From the IMG/VR virus record IMGVR_UViG_3300043418_000072, positions 124,001 through 188,000 of that record: DNA of 64,000 nucleotides. One strand, written 5' to 3'. A program made the translations under genes and the position numbers. Positions within the stretch are counted from its first letter, which is position 1. Each line of letters begins with the position of its first letter. The notes beneath the pieces were generated by a model that searched no databases, was not told where the DNA came from, and was given only the letters and a program-made list of their open reading frames with translations. Shown in pieces: positions 50,281 through 57,977 of the stretch.

Positions 50281-50394
50281 ACCATAGTTAAGTACACTGC
50301 CGGAGTAGCAAGAACCAACTTGCCCACTTTGTTCCGTCCTGGATAGATTACTCTACTGGTTCCCAGGCAAACCGCTAATGTACTTAACTATGGT
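50281..50394 (-). ncRNA. Structured tRNA 3' trailer closed by a perfect 16-bp inverted repeat
   Basis: ACCATAGTTAAGTACA (50281-50296) / TGTACTTAACTATGGT (50379-50394); internal GNRA hairpin. Confidence 0.6.
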
Positions 50395-50465
50395 GCGCTA
50401 GGCGGGAATCGAACCCGCGATTCAGAGGTTTAGAAACTCCTGCTATACCATTTAGCTACTAGCGC
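50391..50465 (-). tRNA. tRNA with CUA anticodon (amber suppressor), CCA encoded
   Basis: 75-nt cloverleaf GCGCTAG...TT-CTA-AA...TTCGATT...CTAGCGC-A-CCA. Confidence 0.9.
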
Positions 50466-50517: not shown

Positions 50518-51921
50518 TTATTTCATGCTGTTAGCACGAACTTGTTCGAAAGTGATTTCGTTAAACAATGCACCGTTCTGGAAAACAGTTTGCAATGCTT
50601 CAGTCCAACCACCAATGCCTTTGTCGCTCCAACCAGTAGGGGCTTGCACACTTGTTGAAAACTCGCCACCACTGTTGGTCCACAACTTAACACGGCCTTT
50701 GAGTGATGCTTTGCCACTGTCAGTGATGGGGTCTTTGTAAACATCAACCCATTCACCGTTGACACATGCACTGGAACATTTCATAGCCCACTTCTGTGTA
50801 TCACGATCAATAGCTTGCAGCAAAGCACCACCCATACCAAATGCAAAGTTATCTGCTGACCAACCTTGGAAATCAACCATAGTGCGCAAGATGCTTTGGA
50901 TGCTAACAGTGTTGATACCATCGCCCCAGATCATGCGTACATTGTTGAGTACCTTGTAGCCCTTGTCATTGGTAGTGTATCCAAAGCCTTCTGCAAGAAT
51001 TGCAATCATCTTTGGCATGACTTCAACAGGATCACCTGAGTCAGGACGGATAACAACTGTGGCACCTGAATCAATCACTTGCTGTTTCAAGTCACCAGTA
51101 CTCCACATTTTACATGCTTCGTAGATGTTGTAGCTGTCACTAACAACTGCAACAATACCGCCTGGCTTACCAAACTGTGTGACCATGTTGCTGTAGGCGT
51201 TCAGTTCACCTGCACGACCCCAACTAGTGATAGTACTGTGCTCGGCAGCTGGAATTGAAAAACCTGCGATGCCAGCATTGTAATATTCGCGAGCGTACAG
51301 TACACCAGTAATAGTGTCGGTACCCATGAAGTTGACCAAGTGGGCCGCACCCCCAATACCAGCACTCTCCATTGAAGATACACCACGAGCACCAAAATCG
51401 TGCAGTTTAAAACCGATAGTAGTAGGATCACCAGATTTCTCCAAGTATTCTTGCAAGATGTTTTTAATGTACTTGCTTTGTGTTGAGACTGTAGTTGGGT
51501 ACCAGACTGCACGAAGCAATGGAGTTTCCAACCATGTGGTTAAACCGTGGCACTTGGGGTCAGTGTTTTCGATTGTGACCAGTGCGTTTCCAACTGGGAC
51601 AACAGTGCCTTCTGGTACGGCTTTAATGACCACGGGCAAGTAGCCGTTGTGTGCTTCGACGATGTAGTCCCACATGGTGCGGTCGAATGGTTCGCCGTGT
51701 GCTGTGAGGATTTCTTCTGCGATGTCAACGTCGGCTTTTGTAATTGGGTCAAGTAAATACTCCTTGAAGAAAATTTGCAGTCCAACAACTTGTGTGAATG
51801 TGAATTTGCCGCCGCGGGCTGCAATGTAGCTGAATACATTAGTAGTGCCAGCTGGGTATTGAGGCGCCATACTAACTTTGTAGCTGTCAGTATTGAGAAT
51901 GATGTTTTTAGAGAGTTTCAT
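50518..51921 (-). CDS. nadV: Nicotinamide phosphoribosyltransferase
   Basis: TDSYK, LHDFGARG, AAEHS, VSDSY, IRPDSG. Confidence 0.95.
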   Translation of the reverse strand: MKLSKNIILNTDSYKVSMAPQYPAGTTNVFSYIAARGGKFTFTQVVGLQIFFKEYLLDPITKADVDIAEEILTAHGEPFDRTMWDYIVEAHNGYLPVVIKAVPEGTVVPVGNALVTIENTDPKCHGLTTWLETPLLRAVWYPTTVSTQSKYIKNILQEYLEKSGDPTTIGFKLHDFGARGVSSMESAGIGGAAHLVNFMGTDTITGVLYAREYYNAGIAGFSIPAAEHSTITSWGRAGELNAYSNMVTQFGKPGGIVAVVSDSYNIYEACKMWSTGDLKQQVIDSGATVVIRPDSGDPVEVMPKMIAILAEGFGYTTNDKGYKVLNNVRMIWGDGINTVSIQSILRTMVDFQGWSADNFAFGMGGALLQAIDRDTQKWAMKCSSACVNGEWVDVYKDPITDSGKASLKGRVKLWTNSGGEFSTSVQAPTGWSDKGIGGWTEALQTVFQNGALFNEITFEQVRANSMK

Positions 51922-52461: not shown

Positions 52462-52679
52462 TATAACTCCACTCTTTCAAAGTAAATCTTGGCAAAGCCC
52501 ATGGGGCTTGTTGCACGGCGTTCAATTTGTAGATACAAACGTGTCGGAGTATCCTCTAACACATGGTGCACCACAATCTGATCCATGGTATCGTTAAACA
52601 CTTGAGTCCTAACTTGTTCAGCTAAGAACAGTTGTTGACTACGCCGGGGTTGATAGTTGCTCTTGTGCATCTTAAACAC
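52461..52679 (-). CDS. Hypothetical protein
   Basis: Coupled ORF. Confidence 0.6.
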   Translation of the reverse strand: MFKMHKSNYQPRRSQQLFLAEQVRTQVFNDTMDQIVVHHVLEDTPTRLYLQIERRATSPMGFAKIYFERVEL

Positions 52680-53691
52680 CTACCGCCCATTGGACCATAT
52701 CGTAGTGGTCTTCAAAACACTCGTCGCTACGCACTTCTGCAATAGGAACCCAACGTGCTTTCTCTGCATCGTCACTGCCTTTTACTTTAGGCAATGCACC
52801 ATCAGGCAATTCAATCTTGTAGCAATGAGTAATGATACGACCACGTGGTGAACGATCAACAGCATCAAACACACGGTTGCCCGTAATGCTACCACGCAAC
52901 ACTGGCTCAGGTACTTTGATACCAGTTTCTTCACGGAGTTCGCGAATAGCTGCATCAAGTACGGTCTTGTCGGTGCTGGCGTTAACGTAACCACCAGGCA
53001 GTGCCCACAAGCCACGACCTGGCTCAGCACGGCGTTTGATCATAAGCACATGGCCTGAGCAAATTACTGCGGCATCTGCTGTGCTAAAGATTGGAGGGTA
53101 CTTCAAGCTGGCATATTGCTTGTTGTGTTCAATCAAGAATTCACGCTCACGGATAATCTGTGCAAATTCCTCAGTCTTACGAAAATTCATCAAGAAGTCA
53201 TAAGTTGATTGAGGTACAACATTCTTAATAAAGTTGCTGTTGAAGGTCCAGTTAAAGAACAGGTCACGAATGTTCACTGCACTAAGTGGTTCAATTTCCT
53301 CTACATCAACATAGCCCCATTGGGGGAACATGTCCAAGTAGAAACTTGATTCGTCTTTCTTGTGACCAATGATGGCAGTTTTAGTACCCAGGATTCGATA
53401 CTTGCTGACAATACCTTGCACACGAACTGCCCACGCTTGGTCGTTGTACATTGTATCAATGTTTTCTTCAATGTGAATACTCATTGCAAGACCACTTGTT
53501 GCAGCCTTAATCATTTGAGCACGTTCGGCACTGGTGAAGGGGTTTTTGTAAGTGCGGGGTTGAGCAGCTGAGCCTGTGATAATTACCAGATTGTCGGTCA
53601 ATGCTGTGGCTCGCTTGATAATCTCTAAGTGAGCATTGTGGAAGGGTTGAAAACGTCCGATGAGGACTAGTGTTCCGTATTCTTTAGACAT
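52672..53691 (-). CDS. nadM: Bifunctional NMN adenylyltransferase / Nudix ADPR pyrophosphatase
   Basis: GRFQPFHNAH, KNPF, Nudix box PGG...RELREETG. Confidence 0.95.
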   Translation of the reverse strand: MSKEYGTLVLIGRFQPFHNAHLEIIKRATALTDNLVIITGSAAQPRTYKNPFTSAERAQMIKAATSGLAMSIHIEENIDTMYNDQAWAVRVQGIVSKYRILGTKTAIIGHKKDESSFYLDMFPQWGYVDVEEIEPLSAVNIRDLFFNWTFNSNFIKNVVPQSTYDFLMNFRKTEEFAQIIREREFLIEHNKQYASLKYPPIFSTADAAVICSGHVLMIKRRAEPGRGLWALPGGYVNASTDKTVLDAAIRELREETGIKVPEPVLRGSITGNRVFDAVDRSPRGRIITHCYKIELPDGALPKVKGSDDAEKARWVPIAEVRSDECFEDHYDMVQWAVGV

Positions 53692-55587: not shown

Positions 55588-55605
55588 AGAATAGAGTGTG
55601 TAATT

Positions 55606-55631
55606 AGAAAATAGGGGCCGAAGCCCCTATT
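55606..55631 (-). terminator. Terminator after tmRNA
   Basis: AATAGGGGC-TTCG-GCCCCTATT-TTCT. Confidence 0.85.
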
Positions 55632-55632
55632 A

Positions 55633-55953
55633 CTATTTCCTGTTGCAAGGCATAGCTGCCCCGGAAGCCTTTATCAGGCAACCATTAGAAACTGTGAGTC
55701 GTTTGCATTTACTTTTTTTGCTTCTACGGCCGGGAAACCCCAACCCTACGGCTTCTGCTTTGCCGAGCTGTCCACTTGTTTACTTGTTGCCCTGTCGAAA
55801 CCATGGCAGGCCCATCAAAAACATACTAAGCACTTTACACCGATATCGTTTCTTAAGTTCGCCCACGATGTATCGAATAGTACGCTTTTGGTGGACCTGG
55901 CGGGAGTCGAACCCGCGTCCAGAACACTTTTCTCTTTGCTTCATACAGCAATA
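55633..55953 (-). ncRNA. ssrA: Circularly permuted two-piece tmRNA; tag ANDSQFLMVA
   Basis: Acceptor piece ends ...GGGTTCGACTCCCGCCAGGTCCACCA (55889) before coding piece GGGCCTG... (55813); G3-U70; tag 55674-55706; ends approximate. Confidence 0.9.
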
Positions 55954-55980
55954 ACTTATATTATAGCACAAGACTATAAT

Positions 55981-56367
55981 TTAACGACCTGTAGTTGTCC
56001 AATCCAGCACAACTTCATCGGTGGTAGCATCTCGTAATTGGTAACGGCGTTCAATTCCTGATGCTTGCTGAAAAGAAGCAACAGTAGTGGACTCGCCATC
56101 GACATGTGCTTGAGCTTGATTTTCTAACGCCAGTTCGTCGAAACATTTGTTAAACTGCTCAACTGATTCAAACATCATAGTTACTGTAGTGACTACAGAT
56201 CCATCAGGCATGTCAGCTCGTGTAGTGACATTTAACTCAGATCCGGGTGCGCTATACTTTGCAATTATTGCATCACGTGCATCATACACATGCTTGAATT
56301 CCGGGCGGTGTAGTGGTCTAACTGCCCCAGCTGGTGTAGTAATTTCTTTAATATACTTGATCATCAA
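55981..56367 (-). CDS. Hypothetical protein
   Basis: TAAATA at 56384-56389, GGAG RBS. Confidence 0.75.
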   Translation of the reverse strand: MMIKYIKEITTPAGAVRPLHRPEFKHVYDARDAIIAKYSAPGSELNVTTRADMPDGSVVTTVTMMFESVEQFNKCFDELALENQAQAHVDGESTTVASFQQASGIERRYQLRDATTDEVVLDWTTTGR

Positions 56368-57249: not shown

Positions 57250-57368
57250 ACCATGAATCCCCAAACAATAATGTTCATACCAATAAACACACCAAGCAAG
57301 AACACACTTACCTTTTCAAGCATTATGCTGCCTCCAACATGTTAGCTGGGAACAAGATAAATAAATAC

Positions 57369-57977
57369 ATGTTTAACTCCAGTAAATACACAAAAATTTA
57401 TTATAACATAATCAAACGAGCTTTTTCAAGATCGATAATTGGTTATACCGAAAAACACCACATCATCCCACGAAGCATTGGTGGCAACAACAAACGATCT
57501 AACATTGTAGCCCTGACTGCAAAAGAACATCGTCTTTGTCATTTGCTGTTGACTAAAATGGTTATTGATCCAGCGCATAGAAGTTCTATGTATCGTGCAG
57601 CTTGGTTCATGAGTAACCGAGTTTTGTTAGGTGTAAGCAAAGGATCATGCTATCAACAATTAAAGGAAGAGTTTGACAAACTTAACCGATCTCGTGTAGT
57701 TACTAACGAAACAAAACAAAAAATACGAGACAAGCGAGCACTACAAACAAACATATCTAACCAATACCTTTCAGGTAAATTAACTGAGTCGCCTCGCAAA
57801 GGAATACCAAATAAAAAGACTTCAGACGCACTTGCTGGACGAGTTATAACTTGGGGAGAAAAACTGTCTGAAACTGCTCTTACCCGTACTAAATGTTCGT
57901 GCATAAAATGCAAAAAAGTAGTTACAGTTGGATACAATGGAGACCGTCACTTTCTTACTTGTTTACTCAACCGCTGA
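57369..57977 (+). mobile_element. Free-standing HNH homing endonuclease with NUMOD3-like tail
   Basis: EKHHIIPRSIGG.N..SN...LT.KEH..CH; ATAAATA at 57357-57367; opposite strand to neighbours. Confidence 0.85.

What the first reader, a model, noticed from the sequence alone, without database searches (positions are those of the whole stretch)
55633..55953. Phage-encoded circularly permuted tmRNA with a non-canonical tag end
Seen: acceptor piece first, then a 75-nt spacer whose ends pair (CAAAAGCGUACU/AGUAUGUUUUUG), then the coding piece; G3-U70; resume context GUAAAU-GCA; tag ANDSQFLMVA-stop-stop. Known: two-piece tmRNAs occur in Alphaproteobacteria, some cyanobacteria and one betaproteobacterial lineage, and ClpX reads the C-terminal LAA. 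Inferred: the MVA end may alter degradation of rescued proteins, and the layout constrains the host.
Basis: partly seen in the sequence, partly recalled or inferred. Interest (0 to 1): 0.7.

Follow-up and report, generated by a model that had tools for sequence, protein, structure and literature searches.

The report
Two-piece tmRNA gene in jumbo phage
A 354-kb freshwater jumbo phage carries a genuine, conserved and transcribed gene for a circularly permuted (two-piece) ribosome-rescue RNA, but such phage genes are already on record, so this is a well-supported new member of a known kind.

Summary
On the minus strand (about 55968-55604) lies a permuted tmRNA gene. It scores as a permuted tmRNA in ARAGORN, 110.9 bits on Rfam RF04321 and 110.2 bits on RF01850 (cut-off 84). 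The order is acceptor piece, 75-nt spacer with paired ends, then coding piece. G3:U70, A73 and an encoded CCA are present, and the tag ANDSQFLMVA ends in UGA UAA.

The window belongs to a 354,098-bp IMG/VR virus record with 48 tRNAs and no smpB. Thirty related genes show compensatory changes in all helices of the tRNA-like domain and in the spacer stem. In the nearest relative the mature parts are 96% identical and the spacer only 49%. A freshwater metatranscriptome covers the gene.

- **Novelty:** phage two-piece tmRNAs are already published, and at least 120 IMG/VR contigs carry one.
- **Host:** cultured Stenotrophomonas, Xanthomonas and Alcaligenes phages have the same beta-type layout, so the layout does not constrain the host.
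- **Tag end:** the -MVA end recurs in relatives with synonymous Val codons. It resembles the LVA tag, which is degraded nearly as fast as LAA in E. coli.

The phage also encodes ClpX, ClpP, a ClpA-like ATPase and an amber-suppressor tRNA.

The parts
55960..55968 (-). Extended -10 promoter element TGC-TATAAT. The predicted transcription start is about 55956-55952.
   Evidence: Read from the sequence. It aligns with the TATAAT of the Rfam beta_tmRNA model. It also aligns with TTGACA-17-TATAAT promoters of relatives such as L093. A second sigma-70-like site (TGGACA-17-TATAGT, 56001-55973) was found.
55889..55953 (-). Acceptor piece. It holds the 5' strands of helix P2, the T arm (55916-55900), the acceptor 3' strand CAGGUCC (55899-55893), discriminator A (55892) and the encoded CCA (55891-55889).
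   Evidence: ARAGORN 3' tRNA domain and Rfam alignments. The T stem, acceptor stem and P2 pairs covary in 30 sequences.
55814..55888 (-). 75-nt intervening spacer, predicted to be excised. Its ends form a 10-12-bp stem that continues the acceptor stem.
   Evidence: 10 stem pairs, most with changes on both sides. It is 49% identical to the nearest relative, against 96% for the mature parts.
55604..55813 (-). Coding piece, in order:
- acceptor 5' strand GGGCCUG (55813-55807)
- D-loop analogue UGGUUUCGAC
- P2 3' strands
- hairpin CGGC/GCCG (55765-55749)
- clade-specific extra hairpin (55745-55728)
- tag frame
- 3' pseudoknot-like region (55671-55632)
- terminator
   Evidence: ARAGORN 5' tRNA domain, Rfam beta_tmRNA alignment and covariation.
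55671..55706 (-). Tag reading frame GCA AAC GAC TCA CAG TTT CTA ATG GTT GCC TGA TAA. It encodes (A)ANDSQFLMVA followed by two stops. The resume codon GCA is preceded by GUAAAU (55712-55707).
   Evidence: FLMVA is kept in L111 and L025 through synonymous codon changes (CTA/TTG, GTT/GTA/GTG, GCC/GCG).
55610..55631 (-). Intrinsic terminator AAUAGGGGC-UUCG-GCCCCUAUU followed by UUUCU.
   Evidence: (9 pairs, 5 G-C) and the Rfam terminal hairpin. Depth in the RNA library falls from 110-200 over the tmRNA to about 2-4 downstream, while the DNA run stays flat.
50391..50465 (-). tRNA with anticodon CUA (amber suppressor), CCA encoded, 5 kb downstream on the same strand. It may be functionally linked (context, not part of the tmRNA).
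   Evidence: tRNA model, 66.7 bits. It is 100% identical over 97 nt in the close relative G402.

Best explanation
This is a functional ssrA gene of a lytic jumbo phage, encoding a two-piece (circularly permuted, beta-type) tmRNA.

**Shown**
- The gene has its own promoter-like site and a strong terminator.
- It has all sequence and structure hallmarks of the family.
- It is under purifying selection on the mature RNA parts and on the tag peptide.
- It is transcribed in nature.

**Inferred**
1. A precursor of about 345 nt folds so that the upstream 3' half and the downstream 5' half of the tRNA-like domain pair.
2. The 75-nt spacer, held by a conserved stem that extends the acceptor stem, is removed. 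Host RNase P cuts at G55813, and 3' trimming stops at the encoded CCA.
3. The two pieces stay together through the acceptor stem and P2.
4. Host AlaRS charges the RNA (G3:U70, A73).
5. Host SmpB and EF-Tu bring it to ribosomes stalled on broken or read-through mRNAs. The phage has no smpB.
6. Translation resumes at GCA and adds AANDSQFLMVA.
7. The ribosome is released at UGA UAA, and the tagged protein goes to ClpXP or ClpAP, of the host or of the phage. The phage encodes ClpX, ClpP and a ClpA-like ATPase.

The likely benefit is a supply of free ribosomes and the clearing of truncated proteins during infection, alongside the phage's 48 tRNAs.
For: - **Detection:** ARAGORN and two Rfam models score well above their cut-offs.
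- **Structure:** G3:U70 is invariant in 30 of 30 related genes. Compensatory changes occur in the acceptor stem (7-11 sequences per pair), T stem, P2a, distal P2 and spacer stem.
- **Selection on the RNA:** mature parts are 96% identical to the closest relative and the spacer 49%. That relative is G402, with a terminase 99% identical.
- **Selection on the tag:** FLMVA is kept with synonymous codon differences in three contigs.
- **Gene ends:** an extended -10 promoter and an intrinsic terminator flank the gene.
- **Transcription:** in metatranscriptome X3 the region has word depth 110-200, and an exact 167-nt contig has depth 130. The next gene downstream has 0-4, while the DNA run is flat at 60-90.
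- **Not an attachment site:** the genome has no integrase.
- **Host dependence:** smpB is absent here and in five relatives.
- **Phage proteolysis genes:** ClpX scores 524 bits (cut-off 359) and keeps the GYVG, TRDV, KKH and IGF loops. ClpP scores 207 bits and keeps Ser, His and Asp. The ClpA-like ATPase scores 814 bits.
- **Precedents:** permuted tmRNAs occur in cultured phages (PMC9004378).
Against: - Nothing here shows processing into two pieces, alanylation or tagging.
- The only exact RNA-library contig (55748-55914) spans the spacer. It could be precursor or contaminating DNA.
- Joints that skip part of the spacer also occur in a DNA run, so they come from other tmRNA genes and not from processing.
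- The host is unknown, so compatibility with its SmpB, AlaRS and RNase P is assumed.
- The pseudoknot before the resume codon was not verified.
- ClpX is present in only 3 of 34 other tmRNA-bearing phage records, so a link between the tmRNA and phage Clp proteins is not general.
Confidence: 0.82

Rival explanations
1. The variant tag end changes the fate of rescued proteins. -MVA might escape or weaken host ClpXP recognition, so that rescued (phage) proteins survive. Alternatively, it might be tuned to the phage's own ClpX or ClpA, giving a phage-controlled degradation channel.
For: - -VA ends are rare: 5 of 116 viral permuted tmRNAs, against 106 ending -AA.
- Val is kept by selection, with GTT, GTA and GTG codons.
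- The phage and its jumbo relatives encode ClpX.
- A relative with a terminase 74% identical has a quite different predicted 33-aa tag ending AFA.
- Substituting the penultimate Ala raises the KM of E. coli ClpXP (PMC7652416).
Against: - The LVA tag is degraded nearly as fast as LAA in E. coli: LacI half-life about 13 min against about 8 min (PMC3511798).
- The phage ClpX keeps the same tag-contacting loops as E. coli ClpX, with only R228K in the RKH loop.
- A ClpX-bearing relative (G423) has an ordinary ...SLAA tag.
- The AAND start and the hydrophobic end are canonical.
Confidence: 0.15
2. The RNA acts mainly as a decoy. It would titrate host SmpB or block host trans-translation rather than tag proteins, like the tRNA-like-domain-only RNA of mycobacteriophage DS6A.
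For: The phage has no smpB and must compete for the host protein. A DS6A-like molecule inhibits tmRNA (PMC4131195, PMC11915505).
Against: A complete tag frame is present, with resume context and double stop. It is conserved at the amino-acid level through synonymous changes. The whole coding piece is 92-100% identical to the relative's.
Confidence: 0.05
3. It is a passenger: a recently captured host gene, or the remnant of an attachment site at ssrA, with no role for the phage.
For: ssrA is a common integration site, and phages can pick up fragments of it (PMC9004378, PMC4131195).
Against: - The gene is full length with its own promoter and terminator.
- The genome has no integrase.
- A permuted tmRNA is present in phages whose terminases are 99% and 74% identical.
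- No close bacterial counterpart was found in 185,579 species genomes by an exact 37-nt pattern. The single hit is 55% identical over the mature parts.
- The gene is transcribed.
Confidence: 0.03

Closest known systems
Betaproteobacterial two-piece tmRNA (Rfam RF01850; Sharkady and Williams 2004, cited from PMC9004378)
   Same: Same gene order: promoter, acceptor piece, spacer, coding piece, terminator hairpin. It matches the full 331-position model at 110.2 bits. The tag is 10 aa and begins ANDxxF.
   Different: - It is encoded by a phage.
- It has a 29-nt extra hairpin before the resume region where the model has 6 nt.
- The spacer is longer (75 nt).
- The middle P2 pairs of the model are not formed.
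- The tag ends LMVA and not ALAA.
- The only bacterial genome sharing its 3' tRNA-like half is 55% identical over the mature parts.
Permuted tmRNAs of cultured phages: Stenotrophomonas phages Marzo, Mendera and Moby; Xanthomonas phages BUDD, Rb1 and XacN1; Alcaligenes phage QDWS595
   Same: Marzo, BUDD, Rb1 and QDWS595 are called permuted by ARAGORN and score 77-119 bits on RF04321. Marzo and QDWS595 also pass RF01850. They are large lytic phages with tRNA sets. Mendera, Moby and XacN1 are listed as 'Permuted' in Table S1 of PMC9004378.
   Different: The sequences are only 45-57% identical over the mature parts. Their tags end in AA or YA and are often 14 aa. Marzo, BUDD, Rb1 and QDWS595 have no ClpX.
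OM43 phage Melnitz two-piece tmRNA (PMC9004378)
   Same: A phage-encoded two-piece tmRNA whose type does not match what the host lineage would predict. Its proposed role is maintenance of the hijacked translation machinery.
   Different: Melnitz has the alpha type and lies downstream of a glutamine riboswitch. No riboswitch was found in this window at Rfam gathering thresholds.
Sinorhizobium jumbo phage AP-J-162 (PMC11242549)
   Same: A jumbo phage of the same broad terminase group. Phosso and Atu_ph07 terminases are 50-52% identical to this phage's. It was reported with one tmRNA, 66 tRNAs and six Clp ORFs including clpX.
   Different: The host is an alphaproteobacterium. I did not examine its tmRNA form or tag.
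One-piece tmRNAs of mycobacteriophages (Bxz1 group) and phage G (PMC4131195)
   Same: Phage-borne ssrA without smpB.
   Different: They have the standard, non-permuted gene form.

Membership tests
tmRNA, permuted (two-piece) form | Covariance-model score at or above the curated cut-off | tested here: met
   RF04321 scores 110.9 bits (cut-off 47) and RF01850 scores 110.2 bits (cut-off 84). ARAGORN reports 'Permuted'.
tmRNA, permuted (two-piece) form | The 3' half of the tRNA-like domain (T arm, acceptor 3' strand, CCA) lies upstream of the 5' half | tested here: met
   The 3' domain is at positions 55-93 and the 5' domain at 169-195 of the ARAGORN sequence.
tmRNA, permuted (two-piece) form | Alanine identity: G3:U70 in a 7-bp acceptor stem, discriminator A, CCA end | tested here: met
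   GGGCCUG pairs with CAGGUCC, followed by A and CCA. G:U is invariant in 30 of 30 relatives, and neighbouring pairs covary.
tmRNA, permuted (two-piece) form | Tag reading frame with an Ala resume codon, a conserved upstream context and a stop | tested here: met
   GUAAAU-GCA, then 10 codons, then UGA UAA. The peptide is conserved through synonymous changes.
tmRNA, permuted (two-piece) form | Pseudoknot upstream of the resume codon | tested here: inconclusive
   The CGGC/GCCG hairpin of the model is present, as is a covarying extra hairpin. I could not establish a second pseudoknot stem.
tmRNA, permuted (two-piece) form | Precursor processed into two base-paired RNAs | tested here: inconclusive
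   Support is evolutionary only: mature parts 96% identical against spacer 49%, and a covarying spacer stem. The RNA data are assembled contigs, and one spans the spacer.
tmRNA, permuted (two-piece) form | Works with SmpB, AlaRS and EF-Tu in trans-translation | not testable with these tools
   The phage has no smpB, so it must use host factors. The host is unknown.
Canonical ssrA degron read by ClpX | C-terminal Leu-Ala-Ala-COOH | tested here: not met
   The tag ends Met-Val-Ala. It works like the engineered LVA tag (PMC3511798).
Canonical ssrA degron read by ClpX | N-terminal AAND and an aromatic residue at position 7 (SspB-type part) | tested here: met
   A-ANDSQF. The comparison with E. coli determinants is from established knowledge (Flynn et al. 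2001, as cited in PMC7652416).
Gene borrowed from, or diagnostic of, a host with two-piece tmRNA | A close bacterial counterpart, and hosts of such phages restricted to the two-piece lineages | tested here: not met
   One MAG in 185,579 species genomes shares the 37-nt half, and it is 55% identical over the mature parts. Cultured phages of Stenotrophomonas, Xanthomonas and Alcaligenes have the same layout.

The most novel reading that the evidence does not exclude
This jumbo-phage clade may run its own tag-and-degrade pathway. A phage tmRNA would write a clade-specific degron (FLMVA here, a predicted 33-aa ...AFA tag in a relative). Phage-encoded ClpX, ClpA and ClpP would read it in preference to host proteases. 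The amber-suppressor tRNA would raise the supply of read-through, stalled ribosomes. The phage, not the host, would then decide which incomplete proteins are destroyed during infection.
Probability: 0.12. Interest if true: 0.65.

Novelty: new member of a known kind. Interest (0 to 1): 0.3.

Why it matters
The result confirms that a reader working from sequence alone can recognise a permuted tmRNA. It adds a well-documented freshwater jumbo-phage example with evolutionary support for the two-piece architecture.

It also corrects two tempting inferences. The permuted layout is widespread among phages: at least 120 IMG/VR contigs carry it, as do cultured phages of gammaproteobacterial hosts. It therefore cannot be used for host prediction. 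The -VA tag end is a recurring, conservative variant.

The wider context may be worth a bench test of whether phages tune the degron. In one genome it comprises:
- the tmRNA
- 48 tRNAs
- an amber suppressor tRNA
- a release-factor fragment
- ClpX, ClpP and a ClpA-like ATPase

The combination of a tmRNA with Clp genes has already been described for a cultured jumbo phage (PMC11242549).

Tried and rejected
- **TAG recoding, suggested by the tRNA-CUA: rejected.** Under the standard code, frames of at least 150 aa cover 297 kb of 354 kb. Freeing TAG adds less than freeing TAA or TGA. TAG ends 25 of 301 long frames.
- **Host or donor search by DNA similarity: uninformative.** A search of 401 genomes of the MAG's order gave only 30-50-nt T-arm matches.
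- **Sharkady and Williams 2004:** not held in the library.
- **RNA evidence for processing: none usable.** The runs are kept as assembled contigs. Joints that skip 63-67 nt of the spacer also occur in a DNA run, so they belong to other tmRNA genes. I did not use the second read-laying run because contigs cannot show RNA ends.
- **General co-occurrence of tmRNA and ClpX in phages: not found.** ClpX occurs in 3 of 34 records.
- **Attachment-site remnant: rejected.** There is no integrase.
- **Megablast of 24 kb of the window against cultured phages:** no relative was found.
- **Complex prediction and structure prediction:** not used, because no claim here needs them.

Full report
**What is there**

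The minus strand of the window between about 55968 and 55604 holds a tmRNA gene in the circularly permuted form. ARAGORN reports 'tmRNA*', permuted, with tag ANDSQFLMVA**. Rfam's general permuted model RF04321 scores 110.9 bits against a cut-off of 47. The betaproteobacterial two-piece model RF01850 scores 110.2 bits against a cut-off of 84, over its full 331 positions.

- T arm at 55916-55900
- acceptor 3' strand CAGGUCC, then A, then CCA ending at 55889
- a 75-nt spacer at 55888-55814 whose ends pair
- acceptor 5' strand GGGCCUG at 55813-55807, hence G3:U70
- GUAAAU before the resume codon GCA (55706-55704)
- ten tag codons, then UGA UAA

An extended -10 element TGCTATAAT (55968-55960) lies upstream. 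A 9-bp G+C-rich hairpin followed by U-rich sequence (55631-55610) ends the gene.

**Whose gene it is**

The window is bases 124001-188000 of a single 354,098-bp IMG/VR virus record, rated 100% complete by CheckV, with 43.5% G+C.
- **Translation genes.** It carries 48 ordinary tRNAs, mostly between 280 and 303 kb, plus one tRNA with anticodon CUA.
- **Absent genes.** It has no smpB and no tyrosine integrase.
- **Relatives by terminase.** Its large terminase is 53% identical to that of the PA5oct-like Pseudomonas jumbo phages. It is 50-52% identical to those of Sinorhizobium phage Phosso and Agrobacterium phage Atu_ph07, and 43% to the Rak2/GAP32 group.
- **Source.** Sequencing runs that hold the stretch are freshwater metagenomes.
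- **Neighbouring genes.** These are a radical SAM protein, an NMN adenylyltransferase/Nudix protein, NAMPT and an HNH homing endonuclease.

**Evidence that the gene is real and under selection**

ARAGORN calls a permuted tmRNA in nearly all of them.

The nearest relative is L111, on a 320,767-bp contig whose terminase is 99% identical. Its tmRNA is 96% identical over the mature parts but only 49% over the spacer. Its tag ANDEQFLMVA** differs by one residue and by a synonymous Val codon.

In an alignment of 30 related genes, RNAalifold recovers the acceptor stem, T stem, two P2 helices and a 10-bp stem at the base of the spacer. Of the 38 predicted pairs, 25 show changes on both sides that keep the pair. 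G3:U70 is invariant.

A variable spacer with a conserved basal stem, between strongly conserved flanks, is what an excised intervening sequence should look like. This is indirect evidence for two-piece maturation.

**Expression**

In a freshwater metatranscriptome (run X3, which holds 79% of the sampled words) the depth is very uneven. It is 0-4 over the radical SAM gene just downstream of the terminator, 110-200 over the tmRNA, and 81-93 upstream. The DNA run from the probable source sample is flat at 60-90. The signal is therefore RNA, the region is transcribed, and the terminator appears to work.

The data are assembled contigs. One exact contig (55748-55914, depth 130) spans the spacer. 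Joints that skip part of the spacer also appear in DNA and therefore come from other tmRNA genes. Processing is neither shown nor excluded.

**Is it new?**

No.
- Rfam's RF04321 was built for all permuted tmRNAs, and the accompanying database lists 79 bacteriophage sequences (PMC11915505).
- Buchholz et al. found that 53 of 133 unique phage tmRNAs were two-piece. They described the two-piece tmRNA of OM43 phage Melnitz (PMC9004378).
- Their Table S1 marks as 'Permuted' the tmRNAs of Stenotrophomonas phages Mendera and Moby, the 385-kb Xanthomonas phage XacN1, and Caulobacter phages CcrSC and CcrBL9.

I confirmed beta-type or permuted calls in Stenotrophomonas phage Marzo, Xanthomonas phages BUDD and Rb1, and Alcaligenes phage QDWS595.

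**Does the layout constrain the host?**

The evidence says no. The cultured phages above infect Xanthomonadales and Alcaligenes. By established knowledge these lie outside the lineages with two-piece tmRNA; I could not test this directly here. Melnitz carries an alpha-type gene in a host of another class (PMC9004378).

An exact search for the 37-nt 3' half of the tRNA-like domain in one genome per species (185,579 species) found one hit. It is a freshwater MAG labelled uncultured Burkholderiales. That MAG has only a permuted tmRNA, with tag ANDERFALAA. Its tmRNA is just 55% identical to the phage's over the mature parts.

The host remains unknown. The 10-aa ANDxxF tag fits a beta- or gammaproteobacterial host, but that is inference only.

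**The tag end**

Among 116 permuted tmRNAs called in the viral loci and the window, the tag ends are:

| Tag end | Count |
|---|---|
| LAA | 90 |
| MAA | 7 |
| IAA | 6 |
| VAA | 3 |
| MVA | 3 |
| LVA | 2 |
| FAV | 2 |

The three MVA tags (window, L111, L025) use GTT, GTA and GTG for Val, and different Leu, Phe and Ala codons. The peptide FLMVA is therefore itself selected.

The change is nevertheless conservative. In E. coli, LacI with the AANDENYALVA tag has a half-life of about 13 min against about 8 min with LAA (PMC3511798). Substitutions of the last two alanines raise the KM of ClpXP with little effect on Vmax (PMC7652416). I expect at most a modest quantitative effect.

**Added context**

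The same genome encodes:
- **ClpX**, 400 aa. It scores 524 bits on the NCBIfam equivalog against a cut-off of 359. It keeps the zinc finger, GYVG, the TRDV pore-2 segment, KKH in place of RKH, and the IGF loop.
- **ClpP**, scoring 207 bits on Pfam. Ser, His and Asp sit in the expected motifs. It scores well above the head-maturation-protease models.
- **A 763-aa ClpA-like ATPase**, scoring 814 bits, which is below the equivalog cut-off of 993.
- **A 129-aa GGQ protein** matching domain 3 of RF1, inside the tRNA array.

ClpX occurs in only 3 of 34 other tmRNA-bearing phage records, all jumbo contigs (G402, G405, G423). Those three have tags ending FLMVA, AFA (a predicted 33-aa tag) and SLAA. 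The data therefore neither show nor exclude matching of tag and protease. A cultured jumbo phage with a tmRNA and six Clp ORFs is already described (PMC11242549).

**Verdict**

The gene is very probably a working two-piece tmRNA that depends on host SmpB. It is a new member of a known kind. The two forward-looking inferences, host constraint and altered degradation, are respectively not supported and weakly supported.

Noticed in passing
window 50391-50465 (-): A tRNA with anticodon CUA (amber suppressor; ARAGORN labels it 'Pyl'), with CCA encoded. It lies apart from the main tRNA array.
- It is 100% identical over 97 nt in the close relative G402 and absent from G405 and G423.
- It is at most 69% identical to any other tRNA of the genome.
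- The genome shows no TAG recoding, and TAG is the rarest stop (25 of 301 long frames).
- The tmRNA tag ends in UGA UAA, which this tRNA would not read.
   Followed up: partly
outside the window: genome 188766-189341 (L149:1492-2115:-), L152:1411-2613:-, L153:118-2409:-: The phage encodes ClpP, ClpX and a ClpA-like ATPase. ClpP lies about 770 nt beyond the window's right end. ClpX keeps the tag-binding loops and the ClpP-docking IGF loop.
   Followed up: partly
outside the window: L150:1435-1824:- (genome about 293.7 kb): A 129-aa protein with a GGQ motif that matches only domain 3 of release factor 1. It lies inside the tRNA array and may be a stand-alone peptidyl-tRNA hydrolase or ribosome-rescue factor.
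   Followed up: no
window 50518-51921 (-) and 52672-53691 (-): NAMPT and a bifunctional NMN adenylyltransferase/Nudix protein, forming an NAD salvage pair between the suppressor tRNA and the tmRNA. This pair is known from other large phages.
   Followed up: no
L074/L156 (G405, 355 kb), L028, L103: Some permuted viral tmRNAs have predicted long tags of 29-33 aa that share A[KT]AST[GT]E...V and end in AFA or FAV. G405 is a relative of this phage, with a terminase 74% identical.
   Followed up: no
L008, L037, L079, L122; L014, L044, L048, L051, L102 and others: Two further families of long tags (23-31 aa) have canonical ends: ANA[NS]TFEYF...AA and ANADTFDFSAMSFTGN...ALAA. Several of the first family lie on contigs of 210-380 kb.
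   Followed up: no
window 55814-55888 and 56004-56300, compared with L111: Against the close relative the flanks are 90-98% identical. The spacer is only about 60% identical, and the upstream ORF (55981-56367, 128 aa, no family match) only 44-60%. These two segments look replaced or fast-evolving.
   Followed up: partly
L009 and L025 (same sample series): Two contigs share an identical spacer and identical adjacent tRNA-like halves. They differ in the P2 5' strand and in the tag (ANEESFLMAA against ANDSRFLMVA), which suggests recombination within tmRNA genes.
   Followed up: no
window 55728-55745 (-): A 7-bp hairpin (GGUUGGG/CCCGGCC) lies between the model's hairpin and the resume region. It is present in about half of the 30 aligned genes, with compensatory changes, and is absent from the Rfam beta model (29 nt where the model has 6).
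   Followed up: partly
window 57339-57977 (+): An HNH homing endonuclease (phrog_655, E 6e-33) on the opposite strand, 1.4 kb upstream of the tmRNA gene.
   Followed up: no
L003 1789-1865 (Alcaligenes phage QDWS595): ARAGORN calls a tRNA with anticodon UUA (ochre suppressor) directly after that phage's permuted tmRNA. This is another pairing of a tmRNA with a suppressor tRNA.
   Followed up: no
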